From positions 62,001-126,000 of IMG/VR virus record IMGVR_UViG_3300024520_000047: DNA of 64,000 nt. One strand, given 5' to 3'. A program made the translations under genes and the position numbers. Position 1 is the first letter of the stretch; each line of letters begins with the position of its first letter. The notes beneath the pieces were generated by a model. It ran no database searches and was not told where the DNA came from. It worked only from the letters and a program-made list of their open reading frames with translations. Below, in pieces: positions 21,701-63,866 of the stretch.

Positions 21701-21763
21701 ATGTGTGACTGTAAAGAATGTAACTGTGGTACAAAATGTAAATGTACTTGTTGCAATTGTTAA
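21701..21763 (+). CDS. Metallothionein-like micropeptide, 20 aa with 9 Cys (not in ORF track)
   Basis: MCDCKECNCGTKCKCTCCNC*. It has an A-rich leader, starts 24 nt after the upstream stop and is followed by a terminator. Confidence 0.7.
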   Translation: MCDCKECNCGTKCKCTCCNC

Positions 21764-21780
21764 AAACTAAATAATTAATT

Positions 21781-21809
21781 AAAAGGGGATTGAACGATTC
21801 CCTTTTTTT
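21781..21809 (+). terminator. Rho-independent terminator
   Basis: AAAAGGGGAT-TGAACG-ATTCCCTTTT followed by more T residues. Confidence 0.8.
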
Positions 21810-21832
21810 ATTTATATTTATAACTAAAGACC

Positions 21833-22174
21833 ATGGAGAAACCATACATATCAGAATTAGACATTAAGAAAGCCGTCAAAAAAGTATTGGCAGAAGACAA
21901 TAGATTGCCCGTAGACGACTATGAGTTTGAGATGGACGATTCTACCTATGATGACATTTATGAACACCAAGGACCTGTAAGACACTTTAGGGGGTCTATC
22001 TACTATGATGGGTATGTTCCTGAGACTGATGACGTAGAGTATGACCGGAAGGTTGCACAAAAACTTTTAGAGTATGAAAGAAATAAATTAGGAAGTGCTG
22101 AAACGTATGTTGGGGGTGTTGGTTTTAAAAATCGTGGTAACCTTATTGAGCCTTTCGATAATATGGATTTCTAA
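21833..22174 (+). CDS. Acidic hypothetical protein
   Basis: 113 aa with TATTTATA at 21815-21822. N-terminus ISELDIKKAVKKVLAED. Confidence 0.7.
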   Translation: MEKPYISELDIKKAVKKVLAEDNRLPVDDYEFEMDDSTYDDIYEHQGPVRHFRGSIYYDGYVPETDDVEYDRKVAQKLLEYERNKLGSAETYVGGVGFKNRGNLIEPFDNMDF

Positions 22175-31691: not shown

Positions 31692-31754
31692 TTTTTCTTT
31701 TCTATTATATAATTATCTTAACTTTTATTTCCGAATAGTAAATCATTCTACATT

Positions 31755-34700
31755 TTAAGCTAATCTCGTATATTGATACCCATATTTCGGTGTACCAGTG
31801 ATTTTATATCTATGTGTTTCAAAAAACATAAGATTATGAACTGACATAGCTAGTCCAATACATAAAATATAAGTATCCATACCATTATCAGTAATTTTAA
31901 ATTCGTCTCCCAGATTTGAATGTGCTCGTGCATAGGACGTACTACCACCAATATACTTTGGTTTATTACTATTTACTTTAATTTTAGTTAAAGGTACACA
32001 TGGTTGGGTTACTTTAATAGACCCACTAGTTTTATAACCACTTTCTATTACCCAATAAAAACTCCCACCATTAGCTTCTGTTATTCTATTATGCCCATAT
32101 TGTCCTACAGAATATAATTCTAAATCAAATTCAGTATCTCCATTTTTATTTAAATAATTATGAAAAATTACATCATAGCCAATACTATATTTATTTGTGT
32201 ATCGTGAAGAAAAAGAATTAGTGTCTCGTGCTGGTTCTAAACTCATTAAGTTAGCGTTGGGTGAATTAAGTCCACTCATTAAAGGAGATGTTTCGTCAGG
32301 AACTTCATATGTTTGGTGTCTGCTCAATCTTTGTGAACTAGTCCCATCCTCCCCAATGGGTGGGTCACCACTAATTAGTATAGATGTAGATAGGGGTGCA
32401 GGACCACATAATGCCTCACCGGTTGGTGTGGTGCTAGTACAACATTCGGGACTATAAGTTCCATCTGGACATAAACACCCAGCATTAGGGTCTGGAGTAA
32501 TTAAAACAGGTCCTTTTATGTCTAAAAATACTGAAGGCAAACATTGGCATTCAGTACATCCAGTTGTAAGTACCATTGATAATGAAGTGCTGCCACTTAA
32601 AAACTCATCTAAATCCGCTGCAAAAGTACCACCAGAAAATATATCTCCTATATTTGTACACCTATCTAATGCCCCCGCCAATGGAGGTGTCGGTAATGTA
32701 CACCCAACGGTTGGATTAAAATCCCATCCCCAATTCCTCAATCCTCTTACAGTATTTAATCCTGTTTGTGCTGCTCCAACATCTATTTGGCTATTTACCC
32801 CATAAGTTGCACTATACCAATCATTCCACCCTAAAGAACTTCCCAATTGTGATGGGTCAAAAGGCTCTGTTGCTGAACCTGGTTCATATAATACGGTGGG
32901 ATTATAATTTACAGCAGTAATAGCACTATATGGATTTGAATGGGTTATTGCTGATAATGTACCTAATTGAGATATCACTGTTGGATTATCTCCCTTTGCG
33001 TTAAATGTTGCTTCTGAAATGGTATTACCATACATAGCACCATACAAATGTAAAGGAAATGCTTGTACCGATGAATTTTGACTACCGACTACAGGATAAA
33101 CAAAACCTCTAAATGCATTATAAAAAGAATAGGTTTTATGAAATAAGTCTTGGCTATATAACCATGAAGGTGTGGGTTGTGGATTTTTAGCTGTATCATT
33201 AAAATAATCAGCGTCAAACCCCATACTATTATTATTACAACACGCCCATTGATTCCAATCATCCGCTATGCCATAAGGGGGATAGTGAGCTTGATTTCCA
33301 GTAGCCTCTGCCCCACATGTGGTATATCTATTCCCACAGGGTCCCCCCCTATTTCCACCATGATACCCTAAATTTTGATTAAGTCTCCAAGTTATATCAT
33401 TGGGGTTAGTTCCTTGCATTAGACCATTATAAAAATTTAATAGTCCAAGAGTTGTAGTTTGTGTTTGAAGTGGCGTGGGATTTGTTAAATCATACCAAAC
33501 CTTATTTCCTAATGCACAAAATCCACCATTAGAGAATCTTGGTTGTGCCTCTGATTCATCAAATATATTAACAATCATAACATTGCGGTCCATACCTCTA
33601 TATTTTTCGCAAGGAACATTTATATGATTAACCCTAATAGTACATGTTCCCGCTGAAATACCGGGACTTAATTCGATATATGGTCCGAGAAAACTATCTG
33701 CACGGACACCCTCCACTCTACCTTCAGTTATGGTATTATCAAATGGACTACAATCTTGACATCCAAATAAGCCAGGTCCCTCATAACCCACATCAGGGCA
33801 ACAATTACCTTCACATAAGTTAAAGACTTCCCCCCCATTTAAATTAAGACCAGAACTTAGGGGTGGTGTCCCAGGCCACGCTGCTGCCACAGATTCCGCA
33901 GTATATCCACTTAAATACGTTTCTCCTGAAAATACATTTGGGTCAAATGTCATACCAGGAGTTAACGTATTGGCAGTAAAAGTTATGCCCGTGTATTCTA
34001 CAATACCTGAACTATAGGAAATAGAACCACCACCCACACCTAAAGTGTTAAAAGTACAACCTGTGGTCCAAAACTCCGCTCTACCTCCAGTTGCTGTAGA
34101 AATAGCATTTGGTGGCAGTACTGGAAACCCCGTATAGTCTCCAGTTCTTACCCCTCTACCATCCGCTTGTAAATATAATCCAGTAACTGGTTCTGGATAT
34201 TTAAGGGTAGGAGGTTCATCCATACCGTTTAAGTTGATGGATGGTGGTGTAAAAGTGCCTCCGTAACCATAAGTCGTATTAGTACACTCATTGCCTGTTG
34301 AATAGGTGGTAACTAGATTTTGGTCTGCGCCACAAAATGTTATTCTTGTACTATGGTTATTATTAGGACCATTTGCTGCCCAATCCCACGAATCCAATTT
34401 ACCATTCCAAGGATAATAAGATGTATTGAGCCACGCTTCACCATATACTGGTATGTGGAATATCTTTCCGGTGTAATTGGGTGTACTAGCCGTAACCCCA
34501 GCAAACCATTCGGTTAATCCATCTTTTGCTGCCTGAGCGTTATCAATACCCGTCGAGCTAACATCATAAAAACAATATACATTAGTACACGATAAAATTG
34601 TGGCGGTGGTCGCAGTAGTTAAAATACAATTAATTAATTTCTGACCTCTATGTCCTCTAACATCAGGCATATCGAACCAACAATTACCACTTAATGAACC

Positions 34701-34985
34701 ATTTTCTGGTCTACAATCATTGTTGGGTGGACCTAAACCATCATCATTAATCAATCCCTGTGTGGTCCCATATACTGGGTCTAATGGGTACCCTGATGGT
34801 ACTGGTGATATACCGTCAACCCAAACTGAGCTGGTACGTCTATAATCATAATCTCGGTCATCTAATGAAAATTGACTTACTAGGTCGAAGAGTCCTTTAG
34901 AGTTTTCTCTAAGCATTAACTCCTTTCCTTTGTCAGTTAAGAAAAGTTCTAGGGTATGTAATTTATCTAGTTCTAGAAACCCCAT
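31755..34985 (-). CDS. Large Cys-rich tail/baseplate protein with a DUF3751-like N-terminus and a vWA-like domain
   Basis: LFLTDKGKELML...FSLDDRDYDY, plus VYCFYDVSS and further blocks shared with 41211..50516. Confidence 0.65.
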   Translation of the reverse strand: MGFLELDKLHTLELFLTDKGKELMLRENSKGLFDLVSQFSLDDRDYDYRRTSSVWVDGISPVPSGYPLDPVYGTTQGLINDDGLGPPNNDCRPENGSLSGNCWFDMPDVRGHRGQKLINCILTTATTATILSCTNVYCFYDVSSTGIDNAQAAKDGLTEWFAGVTASTPNYTGKIFHIPVYGEAWLNTSYYPWNGKLDSWDWAANGPNNNHSTRITFCGADQNLVTTYSTGNECTNTTYGYGGTFTPPSINLNGMDEPPTLKYPEPVTGLYLQADGRGVRTGDYTGFPVLPPNAISTATGGRAEFWTTGCTFNTLGVGGGSISYSSGIVEYTGITFTANTLTPGMTFDPNVFSGETYLSGYTAESVAAAWPGTPPLSSGLNLNGGEVFNLCEGNCCPDVGYEGPGLFGCQDCSPFDNTITEGRVEGVRADSFLGPYIELSPGISAGTCTIRVNHINVPCEKYRGMDRNVMIVNIFDESEAQPRFSNGGFCALGNKVWYDLTNPTPLQTQTTTLGLLNFYNGLMQGTNPNDITWRLNQNLGYHGGNRGGPCGNRYTTCGAEATGNQAHYPPYGIADDWNQWACCNNNSMGFDADYFNDTAKNPQPTPSWLYSQDLFHKTYSFYNAFRGFVYPVVGSQNSSVQAFPLHLYGAMYGNTISEATFNAKGDNPTVISQLGTLSAITHSNPYSAITAVNYNPTVLYEPGSATEPFDPSQLGSSLGWNDWYSATYGVNSQIDVGAAQTGLNTVRGLRNWGWDFNPTVGCTLPTPPLAGALDRCTNIGDIFSGGTFAADLDEFLSGSTSLSMVLTTGCTECQCLPSVFLDIKGPVLITPDPNAGCLCPDGTYSPECCTSTTPTGEALCGPAPLSTSILISGDPPIGEDGTSSQRLSRHQTYEVPDETSPLMSGLNSPNANLMSLEPARDTNSFSSRYTNKYSIGYDVIFHNYLNKNGDTEFDLELYSVGQYGHNRITEANGGSFYWVIESGYKTSGSIKVTQPCVPLTKIKVNSNKPKYIGGSTSYARAHSNLGDEFKITDNGMDTYILCIGLAMSVHNLMFFETHRYKITGTPKYGYQYTRLA

Positions 34986-34994
34986 ATATCTATA

Positions 34995-37451
34995 TTAAAA
35001 ATCAATTTTTATAGACCAAGTCTGGGTACCAACTCTTTTAGTGGGATTTTTAAGTTTTGCAATAGCCATTAAGTCTTTATCGTTATCAAAAAGACCAATT
35101 TCTGTTATACGAACAGCGTCACCTGTTGTCCATGTTGGATTAAGAGAAGTATTAAATTGGTTTTTAGCCAATGTAATATCATATCTCATTTCGTAAATAG
35201 TTGCCATTATATCCGTATTTAAACTACCATAAAAGAAATATTCATCACCAAACTGTAAATTAGTTGGTTCTTGGCTATTATTTAATGGGATATTAATATA
35301 ATCATGTAAATTATAGGTTGAAGCACTTATAACAGTATCGTTAGTTAAATAAAATGGACAATTTGATATTAACTCAGAACCGTCAATCGGGGTACCGCCA
35401 CTTGTATATGTCGGTATTTGAGATGTTATGTCTAAAATTTGCCATTGGGCTGGGTCTGGTGGAACACCGTAAGAAGTCTTTTGGAAAATAATATTAAATT
35501 TATCCACTTGGACACCTGAGCCACTATATGGTAAACATAAGGAATTATTATACGCTCTAATATAAGGAAATTCCGAACCAAAATTCATTACAATGTCTCT
35601 ATTACCCGCGGATGTATCACCAATAATTTTATTATAGTAATTACAGTGAAGGCCTGATGTATGGCCAGAACTACTCTCCAACATGTAGGTTAACCAAACC
35701 TGTTCCATATTAGGTAACCCATTAAAGAAACCTAATGAACTATTATTAGTGTCACATCCAGTTCCTGCGGGAATTAATTCAAGTTTTGGCATTGGTAATG
35801 TCCAATTTCTATTTGATTTATAACTCAACGCAGCAACCAATTCTTGGTCATCTATTACTATTATTTGTAAATCTGGGAATACTTTACCGACTCTATTTGG
35901 TATTGAGGTGGAACCAGTAATTGTCGCTACATTATCATCCCACAAATGGAAATACCTAATACCGGGATAATTCATATCAGCATTTGGTGTAGATTCTATA
36001 TATTGGGGGTCTGAAATGTTAGCAAAACCAGGTGGGCTCACATAAAATGTTTGACCTAATGTACATTCATCTCCAGCTCCAGTTCCTGTTCCACTCCCAT
36101 CATTACCACCTTTTTTCTTATGCCACATCAAGGTTGGTAGATGTAATTTAAAATTTTGTTCTTCACCAACGGCGTTAGAAGCTCCTTGTCCTGTAGGTTC
36201 TAATGCAAATTTCTCACCATAAAAATTAGAAATAGTTTCATTACTATAATGTAGTATAGCAATACATCTTTGTTCTGATGGTAATATGGTTCTTATTTTT
36301 CCAAATGAATCTCTTATGTATGTTCCAGAACTTTGTGGAAGATATCCGGGTATAGGGGGGGTGGCTTGCCCATAAAAATCATTTACATTTGTGGTGTCGA
36401 ATTGTCCACTATCACTATTATACCCAAGCCATTCTTTAGTACCACAATAACCACTAGAGCCATAATCGTTTACTGTCTCAAACAAAGCCGTATTTACTCC
36501 TGCAACCGTACCCCAATTTAAAGTAGTGTTACTAGTTTCATATAATTGTGTCCAATTAATATTCATATTCCACACATTCACATCCGCTACTGAAACATCA
36601 CAATTATTATCGAAAGATAATGAACCTGGTGACCAATATGGTATGGGTGTATCTTCTCCATAAAAATTAAGGATTCCGCCTGAAGGATATATAATCACAT
36701 GTGAACATCCTGAATTAGCGGGGAACATACTATAATCTGGTAAAGTGCGGTCTACAGGTACTCTAATAGTAGTTTCAGTATTAGCACTAGCAATGATAGT
36801 ACCTCCAGTCATATCTGTAACACCAGATGTAACGGTATAAAATAAATAAGGCACTGGATTATTTTGTGGGATATTAAGAAGGTCTGTTCCACAATTTGGA
36901 ACAGTGGTTTGGTATGGATTTATATACTGTACCATTAATATATCCCCCACTACTGGAGTATAATCAATACTATTACATGTCCCACTCATTAAAACCATTT
37001 CACTCCCACCTGTCATACTCGTAAGTGGATAACACCAATTGGGTGATAAAGCGTATTCCGCACTAGTAAAAGCAGAGTAAGGGATTGTGGTGTCCCCACT
37101 AAAAAACCCTCTTTGTCTTGCAGTATTATAAACTGTATTTTCTGAATGCATATCAGTTAAAACAGCATAAGTTTGACCACTATCTGCCCCAATAGGGATG
37201 GGGTATTTGACTTGCATTTTATTTCTTTCTCTTGCTTGGTTAGCAATATTTTGTGCATTCCATTTTGGTTCTGTAACGAAAATGCCGTTAGAGTTTGTTA
37301 AAACATCAGTGTAACAATTATAACACATTTCACTATCTCCTAACTGAAATAGGCTTAATGTTAATTGACCTTTAGATAGTTTTTTTCTGCCGGCATCGGT
37401 TACTCTCACATTTATTAAACCACTGCTTGCTGTTTTTAATATATAACTCAT
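34995..37451 (-). CDS. Tail/baseplate protein: DUF3751-like N- and C-halves around a large insertion
   Basis: N-terminus VRVTDAGRKKLSKG...FQLGDSE and C-terminus VRITEIGLFDNDKDLMAIAKL...IKIDF. Confidence 0.7.
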   Translation of the reverse strand: MSYILKTASSGLINVRVTDAGRKKLSKGQLTLSLFQLGDSEMCYNCYTDVLTNSNGIFVTEPKWNAQNIANQARERNKMQVKYPIPIGADSGQTYAVLTDMHSENTVYNTARQRGFFSGDTTIPYSAFTSAEYALSPNWCYPLTSMTGGSEMVLMSGTCNSIDYTPVVGDILMVQYINPYQTTVPNCGTDLLNIPQNNPVPYLFYTVTSGVTDMTGGTIIASANTETTIRVPVDRTLPDYSMFPANSGCSHVIIYPSGGILNFYGEDTPIPYWSPGSLSFDNNCDVSVADVNVWNMNINWTQLYETSNTTLNWGTVAGVNTALFETVNDYGSSGYCGTKEWLGYNSDSGQFDTTNVNDFYGQATPPIPGYLPQSSGTYIRDSFGKIRTILPSEQRCIAILHYSNETISNFYGEKFALEPTGQGASNAVGEEQNFKLHLPTLMWHKKKGGNDGSGTGTGAGDECTLGQTFYVSPPGFANISDPQYIESTPNADMNYPGIRYFHLWDDNVATITGSTSIPNRVGKVFPDLQIIVIDDQELVAALSYKSNRNWTLPMPKLELIPAGTGCDTNNSSLGFFNGLPNMEQVWLTYMLESSSGHTSGLHCNYYNKIIGDTSAGNRDIVMNFGSEFPYIRAYNNSLCLPYSGSGVQVDKFNIIFQKTSYGVPPDPAQWQILDITSQIPTYTSGGTPIDGSELISNCPFYLTNDTVISASTYNLHDYINIPLNNSQEPTNLQFGDEYFFYGSLNTDIMATIYEMRYDITLAKNQFNTSLNPTWTTGDAVRITEIGLFDNDKDLMAIAKLKNPTKRVGTQTWSIKIDF

Positions 37452-37520
37452 CTTTTATTTTATTTATTTATAAATATTATAACTATTATTTTTGCTTAAA
37501 GTAAACTCATTAACATACCA

Positions 37521-40500
37521 TTAATATACTATTACTGAGTCACCATCATTATCATCAACTTCTGCTAAATAAAAAATATCTGGTTTAATTTCAAATGAAT
37601 ACGTTGGTGATATTTTAGAATTAAACATACTTGCTCTCTTCATCACTAACGGGTAATCATTAATTATTTCAACATTATAGGTGTAAGTTCCTGGTTCTGG
37701 GACTACTACCTTACATTCTACAGTCCCCAATCCTGTGACTGGGAATCCATACGCGTTAGTTCCAGTTTTTAAACTACCGTCTTCTTCTACTATTCTAGTA
37801 ACTGGATATTCTTTCTTTTGTACTACATTACCATCTGAATCATAAACAGTAAAAATAGCGTTACTAGAATATATAAATGACATATTATTCACTTCTACCA
37901 TAATAATTGGGTTTTTAGTAAATGCAATTCCTGTTAATGTGACATCGGTGAAATAAAATGTGGTAAGTACATCATTCACATCTAAGCCACCCGGATAAGT
38001 AATATTTAAAAGTTGTAGAGTATTGTTATTTAATCTCTTAAAATCCCCACCTTCTTGTAATACAACACCGTTTAAAGCTACACCTATGGCACCTCTAGGT
38101 ATTGGATATAATTGAACATAATAGTTTAATCCGTTAGTGTAAATGGTATTTACGGTATCATAAGTTCCTGTTACGACAGGGACTGTTGCTGGAACTAAAA
38201 TTCTATTAATCTCATATGATTGTGGTGTATTAGCTACACCATAAATAAATTGTAATACATCATCTTCAGATAGAACATTTGCTGGGAATGTAAAAACATC
38301 ACCGTCTCTAAAATAATCAGCGTCACCAACAAAGGTACCTGGAAATAATGTAAGTCCGTTTAATGTTACCTGAACTTGTCCTTGTGCTGGTAATTCTAGT
38401 ACAATAGTAAAAGGCTTATCTGCCATTAAAAATGGAACTATAGTATCACCAGTAGTGGTCCCTGAAGCAGATTTTACAATAGCTTGTTGTATGTTCAAAC
38501 TAGAACACGCAAGGGGGTTACCATAATCGAAAGAATTGGTTAATAAATTTATCTCGGGTTCTGGAGGTAAAACATTAAATATAAAATCGGTCTCTTCATT
38601 ATAAATTCCCAAAACATTGTTGGGGTCATCACTACTTACAAACGAAGTGTCCCACCAAGTATTATATTTATCTTCTGGTGGACAATCTGTAGGGGGTATA
38701 ATTAAATTTCCTGTCCCTACTTCTAAATTCTGTATTTTAGATTTACTTATATAATTTGTTTTTATTAGGTATTGATAAACCTCATCTGCGGGTTCAAAAT
38801 CAATAATGTCTGTAAACGATAATGCTTCACCATTAACTTCCCAATCCTCTCTAAGAGAATAACTATCAATCATACCACTATCTATTATTCTCCCCGTTAT
38901 TGGGTTAATGTCAAATTTATTATCAATATAATTAAATGGATGAATCGTATAATAAGCTTTTACATCCTCATTTAACATATTAGTTATATTCTTATACCAT
39001 TTAAAAGATAATGTTATGGGTGTGTCATCCCCCTCTATATTTTGAAATATAGATGGGTCATAGATAACATATTTATCTACACTATCAGTTATTTTACCAC
39101 CACCTTTAGTCATTTCTACAGTAGGGTCTATTATAGTTTCCATAGTTGCTTTAACACCAGGATTAACCCACGGCACTGTTGGTTTTCCTATTCTACCACC
39201 CCCACCTAATGATTTAGTGTAATCGTTTGTGATATTTTTGGACATATCAATACCAAAAAAATTAGAATTATACAACGGAAATAATCTTGTTGCACTAGAA
39301 CCGTATCCACTACCAACAGTATAATCCCCACATTGTGTACCACTCAAAGCAATATGATAAAATCGTGTTGCGGGTTGTGAACTTTGTAGGTACCCTACAC
39401 TTTGAGCCCCTAAAAATCTCACTAAATCAAAATTGTCAGCATATGCGGGGGCACCACTTGTTTCACCAGTCCATGTAGTTTTATTTAATAAATTAAGATT
39501 CCATTCATAAGCTGGGTTGTATGCGTTTGGGGTACCTACATCGGCAAGAACCATAACGTCAGTCATCTGAATTCTGAAAATTTCACCTAGGGTACCACTC
39601 CTTTCAATTTTAACTCTAGTAGTTCCTTGGGAACCGTAAGTTCCCACACTAAAAGGGGAATTAGTTATTGGCCGTGAACCCACCAGTGATGATTCCGTAA
39701 GTAATGCGTCAGTACATGGTGAAGAAAAATCACCACAATATCTTACCTCCTCAATACCACTACTAAACCCATGCCTACTATCACCAGTATTAATTCGTAT
39801 GGAAACGTTTGCAGCTACCCCACCTTGAGTATTGTAATATAATGTTAACGTATGTGTGTGATTAACTTCACCGTATAAACCTAACTCATCCCTAAATCCA
39901 GCTAAAACTATACCAATATTATCGTTATCGGTACCGGTCGCACCCATAGTAACTTCATGCGTATAGTTACAATATTTACAATCACTCATTACATTTATAG
40001 GTATATTATTATTACCCGTTAACTGAAAAACATCACTCGCTACCCCATTCCACGCAATTACATCATTAGTGCCACCCGTAACAGTATAATCCTTTTGTGC
40101 ATCACCTAATGCGGCTGATGTGGTATATCTAGTAGCCGCGGTTAAAAGCTGTGACGCTACTGGATTGCCATCTATACCATAATCTTGTGTGGGATTAAAT
40201 GTTACCCAACTATTAGATATTCCATCGGCTAACCAATTATATAAAAATTTATTTATAGTTGTATTATAATAAAATTTTCCAATATCCGATAAAGCAGCTA
40301 AACCTCCAGGCCCTACATTAGCGCCTTCTGTCATGGGTGTAGATAAAGTACCTAAATACCAATCAGTATTACCATCAGTTCGTCTAGTAGCTGTCGTTCC
40401 AGTATAAAACCAAGCGTCGGGATTATCTACCTCAATGGAACCGTCTTTTTTATAACCACTATCATATCTAATTGTAAAACCAAAACCACTATAGAAATTT

Positions 40501-41192
40501 GGTCCGTATGCTACTGGAAATACAAATGTTGGATGGCTGTATTTGATTACCTTATCCCAACCAGTTAATATATCTGATGGTGTGAGTCCCGTGAATACTA
40601 CACCGGTACCACCAAAAATACTACTATTTAAAAAATAATCATCACTACATGTTCCATTAGAATTTAAATAGGTTGTGTCTACCTCTATCCCATCATACGC
40701 AGTTAAAGTGTAATTACCTGCGGGTAAATTTGAAAATGTGTGTTCTTCATTGCCGGTTAATCCAACATATGTTTTGTATGGAACACCATCCTGATAGAGA
40801 ATATATGTAAACTCTCCTTGGTCGTGTTCAAATGAATGTACCTTAATTGTACAAAAATCATTAATATTTGTTGTGCATCCAGAATTTGTGGTGGTAGCGG
40901 AAAGTGCGGGTTCTGGTTGTGTTTCTATTACAATAAAACTGGTATTAGCACTGAATATAGAATCGGTAACTGTGCCCGAATAAGTTCCTGCACATAAATC
41001 ATATATATTTAAAGTAGTTGCGGTATACCCACTGGGGCCCGCCCAATTTATATTATATGGAGAAGTGCCACCATCTAACGTTACCTCATCAATAAATCCA
41101 GTGCAACTATTAGATGTAATATTTTCTATAATATTTTGTTTATTATATGACCTAATATATGGTCCATCTGATATGTAATTAGAAATAGACAT
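37521..41192 (-). CDS. Large virion adhesin-like protein with SprB-like repeats and a lectin-like region
   Basis: GGTSPYNINWAGPSGYTATTLNIYDLCAGTYSGTVTD and FSNLPAGNYTLTAYD; a DNDNIGIVLAGF jelly-roll segment; two VxLNGxxL..G.DY-type repeats. Confidence 0.6.
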   Translation of the reverse strand: MSISNYISDGPYIRSYNKQNIIENITSNSCTGFIDEVTLDGGTSPYNINWAGPSGYTATTLNIYDLCAGTYSGTVTDSIFSANTSFIVIETQPEPALSATTTNSGCTTNINDFCTIKVHSFEHDQGEFTYILYQDGVPYKTYVGLTGNEEHTFSNLPAGNYTLTAYDGIEVDTTYLNSNGTCSDDYFLNSSIFGGTGVVFTGLTPSDILTGWDKVIKYSHPTFVFPVAYGPNFYSGFGFTIRYDSGYKKDGSIEVDNPDAWFYTGTTATRRTDGNTDWYLGTLSTPMTEGANVGPGGLAALSDIGKFYYNTTINKFLYNWLADGISNSWVTFNPTQDYGIDGNPVASQLLTAATRYTTSAALGDAQKDYTVTGGTNDVIAWNGVASDVFQLTGNNNIPINVMSDCKYCNYTHEVTMGATGTDNDNIGIVLAGFRDELGLYGEVNHTHTLTLYYNTQGGVAANVSIRINTGDSRHGFSSGIEEVRYCGDFSSPCTDALLTESSLVGSRPITNSPFSVGTYGSQGTTRVKIERSGTLGEIFRIQMTDVMVLADVGTPNAYNPAYEWNLNLLNKTTWTGETSGAPAYADNFDLVRFLGAQSVGYLQSSQPATRFYHIALSGTQCGDYTVGSGYGSSATRLFPLYNSNFFGIDMSKNITNDYTKSLGGGGRIGKPTVPWVNPGVKATMETIIDPTVEMTKGGGKITDSVDKYVIYDPSIFQNIEGDDTPITLSFKWYKNITNMLNEDVKAYYTIHPFNYIDNKFDINPITGRIIDSGMIDSYSLREDWEVNGEALSFTDIIDFEPADEVYQYLIKTNYISKSKIQNLEVGTGNLIIPPTDCPPEDKYNTWWDTSFVSSDDPNNVLGIYNEETDFIFNVLPPEPEINLLTNSFDYGNPLACSSLNIQQAIVKSASGTTTGDTIVPFLMADKPFTIVLELPAQGQVQVTLNGLTLFPGTFVGDADYFRDGDVFTFPANVLSEDDVLQFIYGVANTPQSYEINRILVPATVPVVTGTYDTVNTIYTNGLNYYVQLYPIPRGAIGVALNGVVLQEGGDFKRLNNNTLQLLNITYPGGLDVNDVLTTFYFTDVTLTGIAFTKNPIIMVEVNNMSFIYSSNAIFTVYDSDGNVVQKKEYPVTRIVEEDGSLKTGTNAYGFPVTGLGTVECKVVVPEPGTYTYNVEIINDYPLVMKRASMFNSKISPTYSFEIKPDIFYLAEVDDNDGDSVIVY

Positions 41193-41210
41193 TATTTATT
41201 ATATTTCATA

Positions 41211-44200
41211 TTAAGAATATTGGCTTCCTCCACCATAAGTTTTATTATTTTTACTGGTACCCAATACGACACCTCTAACATCATTTTGTGATACTTTATT
41301 ACCATATTTACTACCATCCCTACCTAACATTTTAATCCATTGACTTTGTGTTTTTTCTCCACAAGGATAATATTCTGGTGTCGTCTCCGTTGCACAACAC
41401 CATACTTGTGCTCCCAAATCATCTTGTGGTGGTACTTCAACAAAAGTATCTGTTCCACATTTATAATATGCCTTTCTACCATAAGTTAATGATGGTTTGG
41501 TTATATTATAATATGACGATTCCGTATTAATAACTTCATCATTAATTATAAGTTGTCCCGCTACAGTGTCAATATTTACATCTTCAATATTGCTAGGTGT
41601 AACTGAACTACCCAATGAATTAAGAATGCTGGTACTCAACGGTATAGTATTTAATTTATTGGTGTTTTGTGTCGCTGTAGGTAATATAGGTGATATTATT
41701 GGAAACACTCGACTAGTCCCTTTAACTCTAACTTTAGTATCTAATACATACATATACTCAGGATTAGATAACATTGGAGTTGATGTATCTTTAGATACTG
41801 GCAAATTAAGTTGTACCGTCATATTATTAAAGGTTATCATTTTATTTGCATTAATTTTTAAATTACTGGATTCACCACTTTCTATTTTTTTAACCCAATT
41901 ATTAGTTTTTTTAGAAGACTCAACTAAGGTGGTATTATCAATTAAAGTTTCTGACTTATTTGCTAAATCTACATATGAAAAAGATAATAAATTACTTAGG
42001 GTAATTGGTTCCGTCCTATAGTCTGTACTGATATCAGCAGTAGTGGTTTGTGTGGTGTATAAGGCACCCATCTCATTATTGGTATCTACTGGTTGTAATT
42101 GTCCATTAGTGTATAACGGTGTTATTTGTTTTGTAATGTCATTAGAATCCCAATATAATTTAATATCATTCACCAACGCTGATTGACAACTTTCTTCCGT
42201 AATAAGAAAATATGGGTATTCAGGATTACTACTATCTACTATGTTGGTACCTACGCGTACAGTCATTGTGGTTGCTGTTGTTGCGGTACTAGTCCATTTT
42301 GGGGTCGTTAATGATTCAATTTGTGCAGATGCAAATAACCTTTCACCTTCATTTAAAGTTATAGTTCCCGTATCTAAACTTGCAATAATATTTTTCTCTA
42401 TAAGAATTTCATCTGGTAAATTTGTAGTTATTGAGTTATAGTCGTAGGTATTTCTGTTTTCTTCTGTTTTATTAACTGGTATTGTAAGGAAAGTGTCCGC
42501 GTTTGAATTATCTGTCTCATTAGCTCCAACGGTATAACTAGCTAATGTAGTAGTCGCTGAAGTAACACCAGATAAGGATTTTTGTATAGTTAATCTAACT
42601 TGGAAATCTAAAATACCTGAATCCGCATTAAGTCCATCTACTGGAAAATATGTATTACTTTTGGTTCTACTGTTAACAAATGTTCCTTCTGTATTTCTAG
42701 TGGGTCTGAGTATATTACTCTTCCCATTAATAATAGCTGAGTTTAATAATGAATAATATTCATAATCATTACTTGGTACATTACCCTTATCTTTTGTGTA
42801 TGTTTTATATCTATCCAAATAATTCCACCATGTGGGGTCTTGATATTGGATATTAATTGTTGTTGTAAGTCTTGCCCTTAAACATATATCTTTAGTAGCT
42901 TGATAATATGAATATTGTGTTGGTGTTCTCTCCACATAATAAGGTCCACAATTAGTCCATAAAGCATTGGTTGGAACAAAGGGTATAAATCCTTTTGGGT
43001 TATTTATAAATTTAAATGGTTGTGATAATATTCTATCTGAATAAAATAATCGTGTATTTAAATTTATATCGTCTCCCACCATACATATGTCATGTACTTG
43101 GTCAGATGAAACTCTGGTTTGTGAAGTATCTGTATAAGCACTAAGATTTGTATAAGCTGAATACACTATACTTGTAAATGCACTCAATGTACTCCCTGTT
43201 TGTGTTTCCAAATAATCTCCCCAAGAACCTTGTGTGGTTAAGATAATGGAATTATTACCTGTGGGTATTGGTGCTTCACCAGATATGTTTTGTGAATTTG
43301 TAGCACTTCTTCTTAACTGAGTAGTTAAAGTAAAACCTTCAAACTCACCATCACTATTATAATTTATAGTCTTGGGATTAAATACTCCATTGGTGAGTCC
43401 TACACATCTGGTGGCCCACTCTTCATAATTACTATAAGTTCTGGTAGATGTACCTACTTTTTCTGTACCACCCGCTATTGATTTTTTTCTTAGACTAACA
43501 CCAAATTGTTTTAAATCACTAGGTGTTGTAAAACTAACCACCGTATTTCTATTTCTTTGGGTTTCTATAGTGTCTAACCATCCACCCAAATAAGTAACTT
43601 CTTTGCCGTCTTCAGTTTTAAAAACCTCAGATGTTGGTCCTGTAGTGGTACCTACTAATGTGGGACTGTTATACGGTTGTGGTGCACTAGATGTAAATGG
43701 GTCGAGTGTTGGTATTAAATAAACCTGACTATCTACAATTTCATAATCATTTACATTTAATTCTGTTTGATTTTTTAATAATTCTTTTGATATGTCTACT
43801 TCCAGTCTATTTCCAGTTACATTCCCTTTTGCAAAATCTACAACAGTACTTTTAATTACCCCAGTTTGATGTCTAGCAGCTGCACCTAAATTTGTTGGAC
43901 ATGAATTAGTTACTGGTACAGTTGTAAATATCTGGCTATTATCTACACCAGTATTCTGAAATTGTAAATAAGTACACTCATGTGTTCCACACACTACTTG
44001 TAATTGCATATTATAACTCCCAACTCTATCGTCACTTATAAAATTATAGTTAGGTGTATCTACAATCCAATCCATTTCTTGAAAAACTAAAGCTCCATTA
44101 ACACCAAACTGGCCTTGTGGGGGGATGATGAAATATCTATCACGTATGACGGGTGTGGTTTCTATAGCATTAGTACCGGTTCCATTATCCGTTAAATAAG

Positions 44201-47200
44201 TGCTATTACTTAGTTTTTCAAGATAAAATTTATTTCTATCTGAGGACATACTTTGAATTTGAAAACTTAGTGTGGTTGTTTCTTCAAACAAAGTTTTTAG
44301 TGTTGTTGAAAAACCGGCATAAGAGGTGTCAGATGTATCTATGATTGTATTTGTTTGGACATCTGGTATGTGAAGAAAATACCTTACTGCTGGATTATTG
44401 GTGGGGTCGGATATATCTCTATATTCCCATCTATAAAATTCTATTTGTGTACTATCAGTAATATTTAACTCATATTTTACCCTTCCTTCAAATATAAATA
44501 ATTTATTTTGTTGGCGATATCTATCAAAATATATAACCATCTCATCTGCCAAACAACAAGGGTTTAATATTGCTTTAGACCACTCAAGAGACTTTGCTTC
44601 ATTAGTTATGGCCCAAAATGTATCATCGGTACCTGTAGTCCACCAATTAGGTGGTGAGGTTTGTCCCGCATCTTCATTCATTTTGAAACCTTGTATATGT
44701 GCAGGAACATCATTAACACTAATTAAATAAAAATCTAACTCTACATTTTGTAATATAGAATTGCCTTCACCACTATAATCTGTTTCTTGGCATTCACAAA
44801 CCGCAACGGGGTCTTCACCCGGTGAAGGGGAATCTGGATTACATGCGTCTTCAGTGTCGTTGGTTACTACTACTATTTCTTCCGCCACACATTCCACCCA
44901 ACATTTTGAGTGTCCACCATCACATAAACTTAATGGAAATTGTGTGGTACCACAGTTATTAATGTTTGTCATTGTAAACGCATGACCCGCTAATAATGTA
45001 TTTTCTGGACAACATACCGTATCCCCTTCTTGATAGAAAATGCCAGCGTTCTCTCTACTCCAAACATTATTCCCAGTGCACGCACATGGGTCAACCATTT
45101 CCTCACAAATTTTGTATGTGGACTCAAAACAGTCTTGCCCTCCTACATTAAAAATACCATCTTTAAATGTTACTGGGTCTACAGTATAGGTAAATCCTGT
45201 AGGTATTGGGTTTTCTGGTATAACTATTTCCTGATATGGGTCACAATTATCACCTTCTGTAAAATTATTTCCACCTAAGAATGGTATACCACCGGGTTCA
45301 ATATCTACTGGTTGCCACCCACATGGTGGAGGCCAACAAGGTGGACCTGCAGGTGGTCCGGGTGGACCCCCCGGAGTAGGACCAGTAGTGGATGGTGGAG
45401 TTTCTTCTGGGTCTGGGTTGTAATTATCAGGATTACCATCAGTACCACTTTCACCACTAACCCATTCATAGAAATTACCATTTTGAACTATTATATCTCC
45501 AAACTCATACGTATCATTTATGTTCCATAGTGGTGCTGTAAATTCTTCATTTCCACAAACTCTTATACAAATATCACAGTTTACTAATGAAAGTGTACTG
45601 TTACCTTCTAAGAAAATAGCTAAGTCTTGTTGGAATTGTTGTTCAAAAAATAAAGCTGTGTCGGTACATACATTACGTGCCTGTGCAGTACACGTATTAC
45701 AAATATTAGTAACACAATTTGGGGTGCCATTACATCTATGACATCTTTGGTTTATACATGGATTAGGTGAAAAATTTGTGGGACAATCAGGACTAAAACA
45801 ATTTGGGTCGGTACAGTCCCCACACAGTGTTGTACATCCAGATACACCTAAATCATATTTTGCTCCCCATCCAAAATTATTAAGTCCAGAACCGACATAA
45901 CCACTCATTGTATTTGTAGCGGTTAATGCGGTATATGGGTTATGTAAGGTTATTGCTGTTAACGTTCCGCCAACTGTTGTTACAGTGGGATTTTCAATTA
46001 ATTGTGATGGGTCTACAGTCCCAGAAAACATTGCACCATAAACATGTAATGGAAACATCATTGTCTCATTCTGGTCTTGGTGTACAATGGGATACATAAA
46101 CGAATTAAATGTTGTGTATGATGCATGTGCAGAAGTAAAAGCACTGAAATCCTCAGAATATGGTGGAGTGGGTTGTATTACTGCGGTTGTTGTATTAATA
46201 AGTGGTGAGTTCCAATCATCCATTGGATTGTAAGGTAACCCTTGGGCGAGCTCCCACGCGGGTGGTGACCCCGTTTTGTCATTTGCCTCACATTGTGCCC
46301 CCGGGTCGAATGTCCCACCCCTACTTCCGTGGTAAGCGTTAACCACAGCCCCCGAAGATTCAACAACAAATGTAAACATTAAAACATTGGTAGATAAATT
46401 AGGTGGAAATGTATAAAATCCACCACTAACACCGGTCCCACCAACACAACTACCAACACTTGTTCCAGTATATGTGGTACCACTTGGTAAATTAGAAAAA
46501 TTATTTTGGGAGCCATATAATGTATTTTGCCAATTACAACATGTCGGAGTGTCAAAGGTCCCACCTGATATCGGAATAGTTGCCCATCTCAACCACCTTT
46601 CATCAGCTAAGGGTATGTGGTAAACATTACCTGTAAAACCAGATAAAGAAGTTGCCCAAGTGTTTATGCTATCTCTGGTTGCTAGAGCTGTATCAAATGG
46701 GTTTGATGATGTATCATAAAAAGCGTATATATCTGTATCTAGAGGAACTGGGGTTACTTGTACATTTGTTACATTTAAACAAATTTCTGACGTAAAATAA
46801 TGTGGGTCAACACCGTTATCTGAATTCCACGCGTCATTTCCAGCTGGATACGTAACACATTCTGTTGGTACAGTACGAATACACGAATCGGTACATAAAT
46901 CGTAGGTGTATCCAGAGGGGCATGTGTTGGTTTCGGTATTAAATATACCACCTACCTCATCTAAACTAGAAAAGATGGTGTTGGCTGTATATGCACTCAC
47001 CCCTGCGGGCGTAGCAAATATATCAAAATCTGTGTTTACAGTAAAAGTACCTACAGGGAATGGTCCAACTATTTCACAACCAAAAGACGCTGGACCAAAT
47101 GCTGTCGCGTTTGCACCTTCTAATAAGAGTGTATTACTTCCAGCATTTAAGGTAACGGGCCAAACCCACCAATAATTAAAATTTTGAAGAGCCCCAGCTG

Positions 47201-50200
47201 TACCATCCCAAGGATTTTCAACTATCTGTGTACCATTTAATGTAGCTCTTATTTGGTTATCCCCCGCCATTCCAAAAAGATATTCCCCATCAGCTGGTGC
47301 AGTTACACATCTTGAAAACCCAAAGAATTGAGTGGTACTAGTCATTGTTGCATTATTAACTCCGACTTGATTTAGTCTACCTTGGGTGGTTGTTCCAGCG
47401 GCGTCCCAAAACGGATTAGCCACCGTACCAATTACATTAAAATTAGCAGCTGTAGCACCACTTCCACATGTTGTGTAAGTACCCGGTATACAAAAGCGGG
47501 CACCAAATTGGCCATAACTACTAACCCCATCTGCCTTTACAATAGTCTCCCCTGTGGTTACAGTACTTGCGGTGTAGGTGACGCATGACTCACTTACTTC
47601 ATCATACGTATATCCCTCTGGACAATCACATATCTCTTCTCCCGTACCACACGGACCTTGCACAATTATACAATTTGGGTCTGTTAAGTTGGGTATATTT
47701 GGGTCTGTAATATCATTTATTAAATAATAACTTAATAGGTGATTTGGGTCCATTACATCTTGGGTAATACCACTTAGGATAGAGGTCATATCACCTAACC
47801 AGTCTGAGGTGTCTGGTATATCATATATTGTAGTACTACTATAATATATGTCGCCCATATATTCAGTACCACCTAAAGTTATTTTATTTTGCCATGTTGC
47901 ACCACTAAATAAAAGTCCACCACAAGTATTTGCCGCTTCTACTAATATATCATTAAATATGGGCTCACAACATGTTACAAATGAACCAAAACATTCTGTA
48001 TCATCACATAACGGTTCGTGTTTATAGACAAATTTATCTCTATGGAAAATAGAATTTTCATACTTAATACCACCCGTCCAAATAGTAGTTGCTGGAATAA
48101 ATTGTTCCACTAATCTAATCCAATAATCTCCAAGATTTTCTACATACGCAATCATTTTTTCGTATGTGTACTTATTGCTAGGAACACCACATACATTTTC
48201 ACTATCTAAATAATTTAAGTATATATTCAATAATGTGGGGTATCCACCACCATGTCCGTCATCTATAGTTAATCTATTTTTAACATTTATTAAAACTCTC
48301 CAAAATTTTTCAGCAAATTCAAAGAAAGATAATTTAGACGCATCTACAACAATTTCTGTCCAATCTGGACCACCTATGCCGGGATACGGGGATGATAATG
48401 CTGTAGGACCAAATGGACAACCATACCTTTTAGATAGATTCCACACATCCCACTCTAAGCCTTGACCAACATTAAGATATAATTCAACATTTTTAACATT
48501 TAATACAAGTTTATCTGTATTGGTGTAATAATAAGTTCCTCTATCTCTTAAATTATATTGTCTTAAATTGTAAGTGTCTTTTTTTACCCATGATTTTTTA
48601 TTGTCTGGCGTTCTAACAATTGGAAATCCTAAATTCATATCGGGAAATTTCCTATATAAATCCAAATATGGTTCTCCGTAAGTAAATTTATTTAATTTAG
48701 TTTTTAAAACAGGCGTATTTCCAGTAAACACGGAAGTGGCGGTATCAACAACCCTTTTACCCCTATGTTCAGTAGTCTCTTCAAACCACCCTTCTCCAGC
48801 TTGAAAATAAGCATCTGGACCATATCTTGGTTTTGTAGGAAACCCTCTTTCATCCACAGGATAAGCATACCTACCAACCTTAGTTTCTTTAACGACTGTT
48901 TCGTACCCGTATGTAAATCCAGTAATGGTAATGGGTGGGAATGTACCCGATAATTCAGTGAAATATGAATCTCTAACTGGTACTTCTTCAGTGTAGGTTC
49001 CATCAGAAATATACGCTATTCGTTCATTAAACTGTTTCATGTTAATTGGTGCTCCCGCCACATAAACATGTTCATTAAATTCAATTAGAGCTTCAGGTGC
49101 ACCAATAAATCTAAGCATAAACTCAATGCTTTTTCTGGTACCCTTAGATTTAAATAAATAAGCGGTATTAACTAATAGTCGTCTATATAATTCTGTATCT
49201 AATTCAGCTGGTGTGGGATTAGTAACTTGCCCTTCATATAACGTATCTGGATTTCTAGAAAAAATAGAATCTAAAAATCCCTTGTTTTCAATTGCTGACG
49301 GTGTTTTCCAACCTAGAGTTCTTGCAAAGTTTTTAAGTAAGGTATTGGGCATATTATCTACACCATCATAAGTTACATTGGTCATGTAAACTAATCCGTC
49401 TATATATTTCTTTATTACATCAAAACTTCTACCATATATCTTCAATACCTTATCTACTTTTTCATCTATAGTATCAAACTCCTTAAATGCTGCAGTAGTT
49501 AAAAATCTAGAAATTAAATTCGTTTTATATGAATCAAATGAATCACCAATATCATATAAATCTTCCAAATATTTTTCAAATGGGAAACCATTTATCCTAA
49601 TATTCCAAAAATCTGTAGTAGGCCAAGTAATTGACTTAGTAGCTTGTATTATTTTTCCACTATCTGTTTCGGTAGGTTGTTGGAATTTAGCGGTGTACTT
49701 GGGTGTACTTTTTCTTTCCACCAAAAATTTCTCCATGTCATTCAACTGGTCAAATGCCTTTTCTGTTTCTGTAGTGGTGGGTTTAATATAAAAGGAATCT
49801 ATTGTGGTAACGGAATTACCAAATGGTTTTCCGTCAACAGCTATAGTTAAAAACCCATTTGTTGTATTTCCTGATGTGGGTTTTAAATATTGTAAGGGAT
49901 ATTCTTTATCGTTATAAAATAACGCATATTTCTTAAAAGATAAAACTAAATTTCTAAGTTCAATACTATCACTAGAAGTTAGTGTATCTTTAGCTTGTTT
50001 GGTATAATCAATACTAAAAGGATTATATATCGTATATAGATTTAAATCTATGAATGTTTGATTGTCACTGGGTTCATATGTGATATTAACTGCGGTGTCT
50101 CCAGTATTATAGTCTGACCATGTTCTTACATTATTAAATAAGATGGCGGCAGGAAATTTCTTAATTACATTTTGGACTGCAACTTTAATTCGTTCTCTTA

Positions 50201-63406: not shown

Positions 63407-63407
63407 A

Positions 63408-63866
63408 TTATATATTAATTATCACAAAATCCTTAGTTTCGAAGGCATTATTACTAATAGTATAACTAATTTTAACTTTAGCTGTATTTTCTTTAGTTCC
63501 TTGTCCAGCAATTCTATATACTCTAGGGTCATTATCACTCACAATAGTTCCTGGTGTCTCTTCAGCTTCTAAAGCGGGTTCAACAACAACAGAATTTATG
63601 GTGAGGTTTGGTATATATTTTGTTACTTGTTCTCTTATTTCACCTTCTATGGAATCAAATGTTGGAGAATCTAACGGTTCGAAAATATACTCATACAATC
63701 TAGTTCCAAAATCTGGTAAATAATATCTGCTTCCCTTTCTAGTTAATAAAAGATGAATTAAATCAGCTTTAATTTCTTCTTCTGCATTATCTGTTAATTT
63801 CAAATAATCACCGACATCACTGTCTTGAAATGGGAAATCTATTCCATATGTTCCAAATTCAGGCAT
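63408..63866 (-). CDS. Baseplate wedge subunit, T4 gp25 / GPW-gp25 family
   Basis: GIDFPF...IKADLIHLLLTRKGSRYYLPDFGTRLYEYIFEP. Confidence 0.92.
   Translation of the reverse strand: MPEFGTYGIDFPFQDSDVGDYLKLTDNAEEEIKADLIHLLLTRKGSRYYLPDFGTRLYEYIFEPLDSPTFDSIEGEIREQVTKYIPNLTINSVVVEPALEAEETPGTIVSDNDPRVYRIAGQGTKENTAKVKISYTISNNAFETKDFVIINI

What the first reader, a model, noticed from the sequence alone, without database searches (positions are those of the whole stretch)
32571..46739. The same vWA-like domain occurs in two different tail proteins, each copy with its own Cys-rich inserts
Seen: colinear blocks are shared by the 1076-aa protein (~32571-34586) and the 3101-aa protein (~45582-46739). 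They are VYCFYDVSS/IYAFYDTSS; YTGKIFHIPVYGEAWL/FTGNVYHIPLADERWL; VMIVNIFDES/VLMFTFVVES; GYHG/AYHG; QPTPSW/QPTPPY; FRGFVYPVV/FNSFMYPIV; FPLHLYGAM/FPLHVYGAM; NPTVISQLGTLSAITHSNPY/NPTVTTVGGTLTAITLHNPY; GLRNWGW/GLNNFGW; and FAADLDEFLSGSTSLSMV/FQQDLAIFLEGNSTLSLV. One copy spans ~670 aa and the other ~385 aa, because the loops differ. Known: a hydrophobic strand followed by DxSxS starts the vWA MIDAS site (here DxSS). Inference: a divergent Rossmann/vWA scaffold has been duplicated between virion proteins and displays variable loops, possibly as a receptor-binding platform.
Basis: partly seen in the sequence, partly recalled or inferred. Interest (0 to 1): 0.6.

Follow-up and report, generated by a model that had tools for sequence, protein, structure and literature searches.

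The report
Shared vWA-like domain in phage tail proteins
Two neighbouring baseplate or tail-fibre proteins of an uncultured jumbo phage carry old paralogous copies of an unannotated domain whose best structural match is the von Willebrand A adhesion fold, each copy with its own large insertions; the domain occurs in many uncultured phages and most likely helps the tail bind the host surface, which is untested.

Summary
All ten blocks are present, unique and colinear: P0001 (1076 aa) residues 136-805 and P0002 (3101 aa) residues 1263-1645. The similarity is far beyond chance (BLASTP 1e-14 and 9e-9; phmmer 8e-23; hhalign 100%, 8e-47). The 245.9-kb virus record holds only these two copies.

- **Age:** the paralogy is old. 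Syntenic metagenomic relatives keep both copies, and a tree with the two subfamilies held together is 103 lnL better than the free tree.
- **Spread:** the domain is not limited to these two proteins. A profile finds 189 protein clusters, in proteins of 99-3099 aa. These include collagen-stalked fibres, a crAss-like phage and proteins with tandem copies. No Pfam family matches.
- **Motif:** the canonical MIDAS motif DxSxS is not met. The family has D-x-[TS]-S followed by a hydrophobic residue, plus [DN]-E after the central strand.
- **Insertions:** P0001 carries a ~250-aa beta-rich subdomain. P0002 carries a 61-aa stretch with 12 Cys.

Receptor binding is plausible but untested.

The parts
31755..34985 (-). 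Gene of the 1076-aa protein P0001. It is the eighth gene downstream of the Baseplate_J gene in one minus-strand structural cluster.
   Evidence: ORF list and translation. 26 metagenomic orthologues of about 830-1300 aa. PHROG 'virion structural protein' hit on residues 124-186.
32541..34628 (-). Copy A of the domain (P0001 residues 120-815, 696 aa): vWA-like alpha/beta core split by insertions.
   Evidence: Block positions. AlphaFold model m5dac42d5efde, pTM 0.83. Structural matches.
33585..34328 (-). Main insertion of copy A (P0001 about 220-467), between the third core strand and the central strand ending in FDES. It is a beta-rich subdomain with conserved C-x3-CC and C-x2-C motifs.
   Evidence: DSSP of the model shows strands at model residues 191-348, with pLDDT mostly 73-94. 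Invariant Cys and 'FGCQxC' columns in the small family. No Pfam match.
41211..50516 (-). Gene of the 3101-aa protein P0002, the fifth gene downstream of the Baseplate_J gene.
   Evidence: Orthologues of 2547-3279 aa. Same gene order in L002, L003 and L004.
45537..46784 (-). Copy B of the domain (P0002 residues 1245-1660, 416 aa).
   Evidence: AlphaFold model m99250ce46cd4, pTM 0.74, core blocks at pLDDT about 90. Structural matches.
45663..45845 (-). Cys-rich insertion of copy B (P0002 residues 1558-1618): 12 Cys in 61 residues and three CxxC motifs. It lies between the GLxNFGW block and the C-terminal helix.
   Evidence: Low pLDDT at model residues 314-374. Present only in P0002, P0028 and P0029 among the giant-protein orthologues.
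46785..47630 (-). PA14-like segment directly N-terminal of copy B (P0002 residues 963-1244). It is absent from orthologues P0030 and P0034.
   Evidence: BLASTP colinearity gap. Pfam PA14 at E 0.003, below the family cut-off. Language-model features point to PA14 clusters at 0.82-0.86, which is a lead only.
61553..63866 (-). Baseplate anchor genes upstream of the cluster: gp25-like (63408-63866) and Baseplate_J/gp6-like (61553-63406).
   Evidence: Pfam GPW_gp25 at 8e-13 and Baseplate_J at 7e-7. PHROG baseplate wedge at 4e-19.

Best explanation
P0001 and P0002 are two baseplate-distal or tail-fibre proteins of an uncultured jumbo myophage, probably infecting Bacteroidota. Each contains one copy of a so far unannotated globular domain.

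The minimal core is about 210-330 aa. It is a three-layer alpha/beta/alpha sandwich whose strand and helix order and best structural matches are those of von Willebrand factor A (vWA) domains. The N- and C-terminal strands lie side by side and carry conserved cysteines, so the domain can sit as a knob inserted into a longer fibre.

The nearly invariant polar residues sit at the C-terminal ends of the central strands, on the face where vWA domains hold their MIDAS metal. In copy-B numbering they are D24, [TS]26, S27, E62, [DN]141, E142, Y151, H152, D212, Y231, N282 and Y284.

The most likely mechanism (inferred, not shown) is that this face binds a metal ion or directly a host-surface ligand, and that lineage-specific insertions around it tune or extend specificity. 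These insertions are a ~250-aa beta-rich subdomain in P0001 and a Cys-knot, with a PA14-like neighbour, in P0002.

The two copies are old paralogues, kept side by side in related phages. This suggests two non-redundant adhesion modules on one tail.
For: Homology of the two copies.

Both copies are conserved in syntenic relatives L003 and L004, with hmmsearch E 1e-76 to 1e-129.

Sister relation is not rejected and is favoured: the constrained tree is 103 lnL better, p-AU 0.99. Core identity between the two subfamilies is 33%, against 25-28% to other members.

Broad family: 189 clusters at E <= 1e-3 and 116 at <= 1e-10. Members occur in varied architectures, including tandem copies, a collagen-repeat stalk and SprB repeats, a neighbouring Peptidase_S74 fibre gene and a crAss-like tail region.

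Same core secondary-structure order in both models.

vWA is the commonest structural match:
- Rpn10, vWF A1, integrin I and beta-I domains, Sec23/24.
- Pilus-tip adhesins PilB, PitA, RrgA and GBS104.

All ten best named language-model neighbours belong to the vWA clan.

Conservation profile over 101 diverse copies.

The strand-1 pattern [DN]-h5-D-x-[TS]-S resembles the D-h5-D-G-S-S of vWF A domains. This comparison is from my own knowledge and is a lead, not a test.

Structural-module context: gp25 and Baseplate_J lie upstream.
Against: - SGNH hydrolases tie for the P0002 model.
- No Pfam VWA model matches any of 101 copies better than E 0.18, nor the record at E <= 1.
- The MIDAS motif is not canonical.
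- The window's own P0002 copy has V at the [DN]141 position, the only one of 101.
- No binding, metal or host data exist, and the host is unknown.
- Location of the proteins on the virion is inferred from gene order only.
Confidence: 0.5

Rival explanations
1. The domain is an enzyme. It would be a divergent SGNH-like or otherwise novel Ser/His-type carbohydrate esterase or hydrolase that modifies or cleaves a host surface polysaccharide during adsorption, as SGNH esterase domains do in some phage tailspikes and in viral haemagglutinin-esterases.
For: - Many nearly invariant polar residues lie at the C-terminal strand ends, including S27 followed by M or L, H152 (87 of 101) and H247 (57 of 101).
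- A weak profile hit to the torovirus haemagglutinin-esterase 3i1k, E 0.011.
Against: - There is no G-D-S block, no GxND block and no DxxH block.
- The position equivalent to the block V His is Q in 35 of 101 copies.
- In the P0001 model SGNH ranks about 1 Z unit below vWA (6.5 against 7.7), and it is absent from the 50 best rows of the second look.
- Language-model neighbours are all vWA clan, none SGNH.
- The haemagglutinin-esterase hit is not significant and covers only 91 profile positions.
Confidence: 0.22
2. The domain is a purely architectural module, serving as a spacer, oligomerisation module or attachment knob within the fibre or baseplate. The conserved residues would then stabilise the fold, or bind a structural Ca2+ or Zn2+, rather than bind a host ligand.
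For: - Conserved Cys at both termini and in the inserts suggest structural stapling.
- The domain lies mid-protein in the giant proteins, not at the distal C-terminus.
- The P0002 copy has lost D141.
Against: - In several family members the domain is the C-terminal globular part after a collagen-like stalk, as in P0070 with collagen at 147-195 and the domain at 222-589 of 650 aa. That is the usual place of a receptor-binding head.
- The high turnover of insertions around a constant core, together with a PA14-like neighbour, fits ligand recognition better.
Confidence: 0.18
3. The similarity is a compositional or chance artefact, or the ORFs are not real genes.
For: None found. Pfam has no match, so no external annotation confirms the genes.
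Against: - E-values down to 8e-47.
- Dozens of full-length orthologues, with synteny.
- 189 related clusters.
- Confident fold models.
Confidence: 0.01

Closest known systems
vWA domains of Gram-positive pilus-tip adhesins (RrgA 2ww8, GBS104 3tw0, PitA 7w6b, PilB 7b7p)
   Different: Those adhesins have a canonical MIDAS motif DxSxS...T...D and match Pfam VWA. This domain has D-x-[TS]-S-[ML] and no Pfam match. Its insertions are at other positions and unrelated in sequence, and it belongs to phages rather than bacterial pili.
Integrin I / beta-I domains, vWF A1 and A3, Rpn10, Sec23/24 trunk, Cachd1 vWA (Pfam clan vWA-like)
   Different: Sequence relationship is not detectable with Pfam HMMs. 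Extra conserved blocks (QPT, YP, NPTV, NPY, GLxNFGW) have no vWA counterpart that I know of. The core is 210-330 aa, against about 180-200 aa in those domains.
SGNH/GDSL esterases and O-acetyltransferases (PatB 7tjb/7trr, CJ0610C 8gr2, Ape1 8gld); SGNH domains of phage tailspikes and viral haemagglutinin-esterases
   Different: Blocks I (GDS), III (GxND) and V (DxxH) are absent. These proteins rank lower for the P0001 model.
Uncharacterised 1189-aa protein A0A7S9SUN3 of Virus NIOZ-UU157 (BFVD model)
   Same: It is the only clearly significant structural match in any library: Foldseek E 7e-7, probability 1.00, 16% identity. It is probably a member of the same unannotated family in an environmental virus.
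   Different: Its function is unknown too, and its architecture is different.

Membership tests
vWA (von Willebrand factor type A) superfamily | Three-layer alpha/beta/alpha fold with a vWA-type central sheet, an alternating strand-helix order and adjacent termini | tested here: inconclusive
vWA (von Willebrand factor type A) superfamily | MIDAS motif D-x-S-x-S after strand 1, plus Thr and Asp from later loops | tested here: not met
   Over 101 copies: D 98, x, T/S 98, S 94, then M/L/I/F in 75 instead of Ser. [DN]141-E142 follows the central strand (D 86, N 11; E 96). Two of the three strand-1 positions and the later acidic position fit, but the canonical motif does not. P0002 itself has V at position 141.
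vWA (von Willebrand factor type A) superfamily | Significant match to a Pfam vWA-clan model (VWA, VWA_2, VWA_4 and others) | tested here: not met
   No Pfam hit for P0001 or P0002. One of 101 copies hits VWA_4, at E 0.18. PF00092 finds nothing in the whole record at E <= 1.
SGNH/GDSL hydrolases | Conserved blocks I (GDS, Ser nucleophile), II (Gly), III (GxND) and V (DxxH) | tested here: not met
   No GDS: the motif is x-[TS]-S-[ML] preceded by D three residues earlier. No GxND: the motif is F-h-[DN]-E. No DxxH: H247 is H in 57 and Q in 35 copies, with no Asp three residues before it.
SGNH/GDSL hydrolases | SGNH-type flavodoxin-like fold | tested here: inconclusive
The unannotated phage domain family defined here (profile from alignments A2/A5) | Colinear signature [DN]-h5-D-x-[TS]-S ... 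E-R-W ... F-h-[DN]-E ... Y-H ... Q-P-T ... Y-P ... L-[HQ] ... N-P-Y ... G-L-x-x-[YF]-G-W | tested here: met
   Both window copies carry every block, with P0002 having V for [DN]141. hmmsearch gives full-length matches, E about 1e-119 for P0001, and P0002's closest orthologue P0028 at 9e-122.
PA14 domain (for P0002 residues 963-1244 only) | Match to Pfam PF07691 above its gathering score | tested here: not met
   18.0 bits against a cut-off of 24, E 0.003. P0028 gives 17.6 bits. Language-model features point to PA14 clusters at 0.82-0.86. This is a lead only.

The most novel reading that the evidence does not exclude
This is a new, widespread phage receptor-binding domain superfamily. It would be a vWA-derived, metal-dependent adhesin knob with a non-canonical metal site, whose loop positions serve as hot spots for whole inserted subdomains. 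It would be shared by jumbo myophages, crAss-like phages and collagen-stalked fibres of uncultured phages, largely of Bacteroidota. If so, it could serve as a sequence marker for locating host-recognition proteins in phage genomes that currently have no annotated tail fibres.
Probability: 0.3. Interest if true: 0.6.

Novelty: new variant of a known kind. Interest (0 to 1): 0.4.

Why it matters
Tail-fibre and baseplate proteins of uncultured marine and gut-type phages are mostly unannotated, so host-recognition genes cannot be located in them. A profile for this domain already marks at least 189 protein clusters, none of which Pfam recognises. In the cases examined it marks likely adhesion modules in very different phage types.

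If the conserved face proves to be a metal-dependent binding site, the family would extend the vWA adhesion principle to phage tails. It would also give a defined scaffold on which specificity evolves by insertion of subdomains.

The finding is a solid unannotated domain family. It is not a new biological principle.

Tried and rejected
- **Known phages:** megablast of 31000-51000 and tblastn of the P0002 domain and of whole P0001 against 50,697 GenBank phage records found no match. Only the gp6-like protein finds distant relatives at 27-30% identity: Flavobacterium phage immuto, Microcystis phage Mel-JY01 and LR756508.
- **Bacterial genomes:** scanning with alignment A5 failed because no stretch was conserved enough. 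With A2, 33 pattern hits were found but none was confirmed. This is a narrow pattern search and does not prove absence from bacteria.
- **The genome search 'relatives':** not available for a virus record.
- **Sequence and fold libraries:** Foldseek against the PDB found nothing at E < 0.1 for either model. The ESM Atlas shape search gave only generic Rossmann-like rows with TM <= 0.35. A profile against PDB sequences gave only torovirus HE at E 0.011, judged not significant. A Pfam scan of 101 copies at E <= 1 gave no recurrent family.
- **Diversity-generating retroelement** as the source of loop variation: no reverse transcriptase in the record.
- **Recent intragenomic duplication:** rejected, because both copies are conserved in divergent syntenic relatives.
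- **Third copy in the genome:** none found.
- I left it out of every alignment sent to remote tools afterwards. It remained in local scripts: the BLASTP comparison and the tree.
- **Literature:** nothing describes this domain.
- **Not used:** Read laying, the look-up of sequencing runs and complex prediction, because no claim here depends on them.
Full report
**Setting.** The window is bases 62001-126000 of a 245,874-bp linear IMG/VR virus record with 33% GC. CheckV estimates it as 77% complete. Genes for a gp25-like protein (63408-63866) and a Baseplate_J/gp6-like protein (61553-63406) open a long minus-strand cluster of large ORFs without annotation. SbcC-like, primase and RuvC-like genes lie downstream. 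The gp6-like protein is only 27-30% identical to those of Flavobacterium phage vB_FspM_immuto, Microcystis phage Mel-JY01 and an uncultured 484-kb phage. This is therefore an uncultured jumbo myophage without close cultured relatives. P0002 (3101 aa, 41211-50516) and P0001 (1076 aa, 31755-34985) are the fifth and eighth genes after the Baseplate_J gene. Their assignment as tail or baseplate proteins rests on this gene order and on weak PHROG hits to 'virion structural protein' and 'tail fiber protein'.

**Observation.** They lie at P0001 residues 136-805 and P0002 residues 1263-1645, at the window coordinates given. The statistical support is as follows:
- BLASTP gives two colinear segments, E 1e-14 and 9e-9.
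- phmmer with the P0002 domain against all ORFs of the record finds only P0001, at 8e-23, so the genome has exactly two copies.
- hhalign between the two orthologue families gives 100% probability, E 8e-47.

The difference in length (670 against 383 aa) is due to insertions between conserved blocks.

**Relatives.**
- P0001 has 26 metagenomic orthologues of about 830-1300 aa, with the domain at about residues 120-760.
- P0002 has ten orthologues of 2547-3279 aa. The most compact of these carry the domain in 319-332 aa (P0031, P0032).
- Loci L002, L003 and L004 show the same gene order as the window. In L003 and L004 both the giant protein and the ~900-1000-aa protein carry the domain, at E 1e-76 to 1e-129. 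The pair is therefore old and maintained.
- The free quick tree of 142 copies did not join the two subfamilies. The tree with them held together is 103 log-likelihood units better, with p-AU 0.99. Their mean core identity is 33%, against 25-28% to other members. Both results are consistent with one duplication in an ancestor of this phage group. The alignment profile was built from these two subfamilies, which may favour them slightly.

**A wider family.** A profile of 18 copies, searched against 1.84 billion representative proteins, finds 189 clusters at E <= 1e-3, 116 at <= 1e-10 and 23 at <= 1e-30. Lengths range from 99 to 3099 aa and the domain sits at many different positions. The smallest complete copies span 209-250 aa.
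- Six proteins carry two copies in tandem.
- Partner features include a collagen triple-helix stalk (P0070), SprB repeats (P0060) and a cEGF-like motif.
- Two neighbourhoods were inspected. One has a Peptidase_S74 fibre gene nearby (L005). One is crAss-like, next to a CrAss_Ring_3_4 gene and a Por_Secre_tail protein, which points to a Bacteroidota host (L006).
- All members are metagenomic and unnamed.
- No GenBank phage matched by tblastn, and a narrow pattern scan of bacterial genomes found none.
- P0037 shares the N-terminal 580 aa of P0002 but carries the domain about 1100 residues further along. The module has therefore moved within this protein family.

**Fold.**
- The model of copy B (416 aa, 36-row alignment) has pTM 0.74, with core blocks at pLDDT about 90.
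- The model of copy A (705 aa, 64 rows) has pTM 0.83.
- Both models show the same order of elements: a terminal strand, strand 1 ending in F-Y-D, a long helix, strand 2, short helices, a short strand, a helix, then an insertion. After the insertion comes a long central strand ending in [DV]-E-S, a long loop, a helix, a strand ending in Y-P, a helix carrying L-H and a loop region with the NPTV, NPY and GLxNFGW blocks. A second insertion, a helix carrying F..DL..FL and a terminal strand close the domain.
- Foldseek finds nothing significant in the PDB.
- The second look at Foldseek's candidates gives 50 of 50 vWA-fold rows for copy A. For copy B it gives a PatB/vWA tie, at 7.9 against 7.5.
- Language-model features of a minimal copy have only vWA-clan clusters among the ten best named neighbours, at 0.83-0.87. 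By the tool's own calibration this is a lead only.
- The only clearly significant structural match is an uncharacterised protein of Virus NIOZ-UU157, which is probably a family member.

**Conserved site.** Over 101 diverse copies the nearly invariant residues, in copy-B numbering, are:
- D24 (98)
- [TS]26 (98)
- S27 (94)
- E62 (97)
- [DN]141 (97)
- E142 (96)
- Y151 (99)
- H152 (87)
- P205 (88)
- D212 (88)
- Y231 and P232 (94 each)
- N282 (100)
- Y284 (96)
- L301 (96)

By the secondary structure of the models, most of these residues lie at or just after the C-terminal ends of the parallel strands, or at the start of the following helix. That is one face of the sheet, the face that carries the MIDAS site in vWA domains and the catalytic residues in SGNH enzymes. 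This placement is inferred from DSSP order, not from coordinates.

The strand-1 pattern [DN]-h5-D-x-[TS]-S resembles the D-h5-D-G-S-S of vWF A domains (my own knowledge). The canonical DxSxS is not met, because the fifth position is hydrophobic. SGNH blocks GDS, GxND and DxxH are absent, and H247 is Q in a third of the copies. The window's P0002 copy is the only one of 101 with V at position 141, whereas P0001 keeps FDES.

**Insertions.**
- In P0001 the segment between the short third strand and the central strand (about residues 220-467) is modelled as a beta-rich subdomain with pLDDT mostly 73-94. It carries Cys motifs that are invariant within the small family. It has no Pfam match.
- Further P0001 insertions follow FDES (about 479-539) and NPY (about 690-745).
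- In P0002 the main insertion (1558-1618) has 12 Cys in 61 residues and three CxxC motifs. It is shared only with P0028 and P0029, and is modelled with low confidence.
- Other giant-protein orthologues (P0034-P0036) instead carry Cys-rich insertions at three other loop positions.

Conserved Cys near both termini (C2, C406 and C410 in the two subfamilies) could staple the neighbouring terminal strands or bind zinc. Which of these applies was not tested.

**Function.**
- Shown: homology, conservation, modularity, location in a baseplate gene cluster, a vWA-like predicted architecture and a conserved polar face.
- Inferred: the face binds a metal and/or a host-surface ligand, and the domain is an adhesion module whose insertions and neighbours modulate specificity. 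One such neighbour is the PA14-like segment at P0002 963-1244, which is absent from orthologues P0030 and P0034.

I give this reading about 0.5, an enzymatic esterase or hydrolase role about 0.22, and a purely architectural role about 0.18.

**Comparison and novelty.** vWA domains with inserted arms on fibre-like adhesins are known (RrgA, GBS104, PitA, PilB), and phage proteins annotated with VWFA domains exist. The kind of thing is therefore known. What is new is the family itself. It is unrecognised by Pfam, has its own signature and a non-canonical site, is widespread in uncultured phages of several types, and is present twice in this tail module. I rate it a new variant of a known kind, with moderate interest.

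Noticed in passing
window 46785-47630 (-), P0002 residues 963-1244: This ~280-aa segment lies directly before the domain and is missing from orthologues P0030 and P0034. It looks PA14-like, that is, glycan-binding: Pfam PA14 at E 0.003, below the cut-off, in both P0002 and P0028, and language-model neighbours that are all PA14 clusters.
   Followed up: partly
window about 46359-46361 (-), P0002 residue 1385: The window's giant-protein copy has Val at the family's [DN]141 position (D 86, N 11, V 1 of 101 copies). Its closest orthologue P0028 and the P0001 copy keep Asp. This may be a degenerate site in this one copy.
   Followed up: partly
L006 2996-7945 (ENA scaffold, 76 kb): A 1649-aa protein with two copies of the domain sits in a crAss-like phage next to a CrAss_Ring_3_4 gene. 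The same contig encodes a 975-aa protein with a Por_Secre_tail (type IX secretion sorting) domain, which is odd for a phage gene and hints at a Bacteroidota host.
   Followed up: no
P0037 (2967 aa, JGI metagenome): It has the same N-terminal 580 aa as P0002 (32% identity), but the domain lies at 2136-2565 instead of about 1000-1660. It is followed by a segment similar to P0002 733-842. This shows domain shuffling within the giant-protein family.
   Followed up: partly
window 32361-32585 (-), P0001 residues 801-875: A second Cys-rich stretch (8 Cys in 75 residues, including the C-x-C and CC pairs at residues 837/839 and 848/849) lies just after the domain. P0002 also has Cys clusters at 826-875 and 1801-1900, outside the domain. 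Cys makes up 2.3-3.0% of these proteins, against 1.1% in the genome's ORFs.
   Followed up: no
window 28484-61479 (-): Ten further ORFs of the cluster have no Pfam match (1163, 571, 339, 421, 842, 303, 1223, 818, 554 and 375 aa), and all but one have no PHROG match. The exception is the 1223-aa ORF, with a weak 'tail fiber protein' PHROG hit at E 2e-4. Their order and sizes are conserved in metagenomic relatives L002-L004. This is a whole baseplate and fibre module without annotation.
   Followed up: partly
L005 1425-5273 (JGI contig, 33 kb): The phage contig that carries the collagen-stalked family member P0070 also encodes glutamine synthetase, carbamoyltransferase, thioredoxin and glutaredoxin genes, which are possible auxiliary metabolic genes.
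   Followed up: no
window 19166-21676 (+): An 836-aa ORF lies on the opposite strand to its neighbours, in a stretch with reversed GC and AT skew (20001-22000: GC skew +0.13, AT skew +0.22). It has no PHROG match.
   Followed up: no
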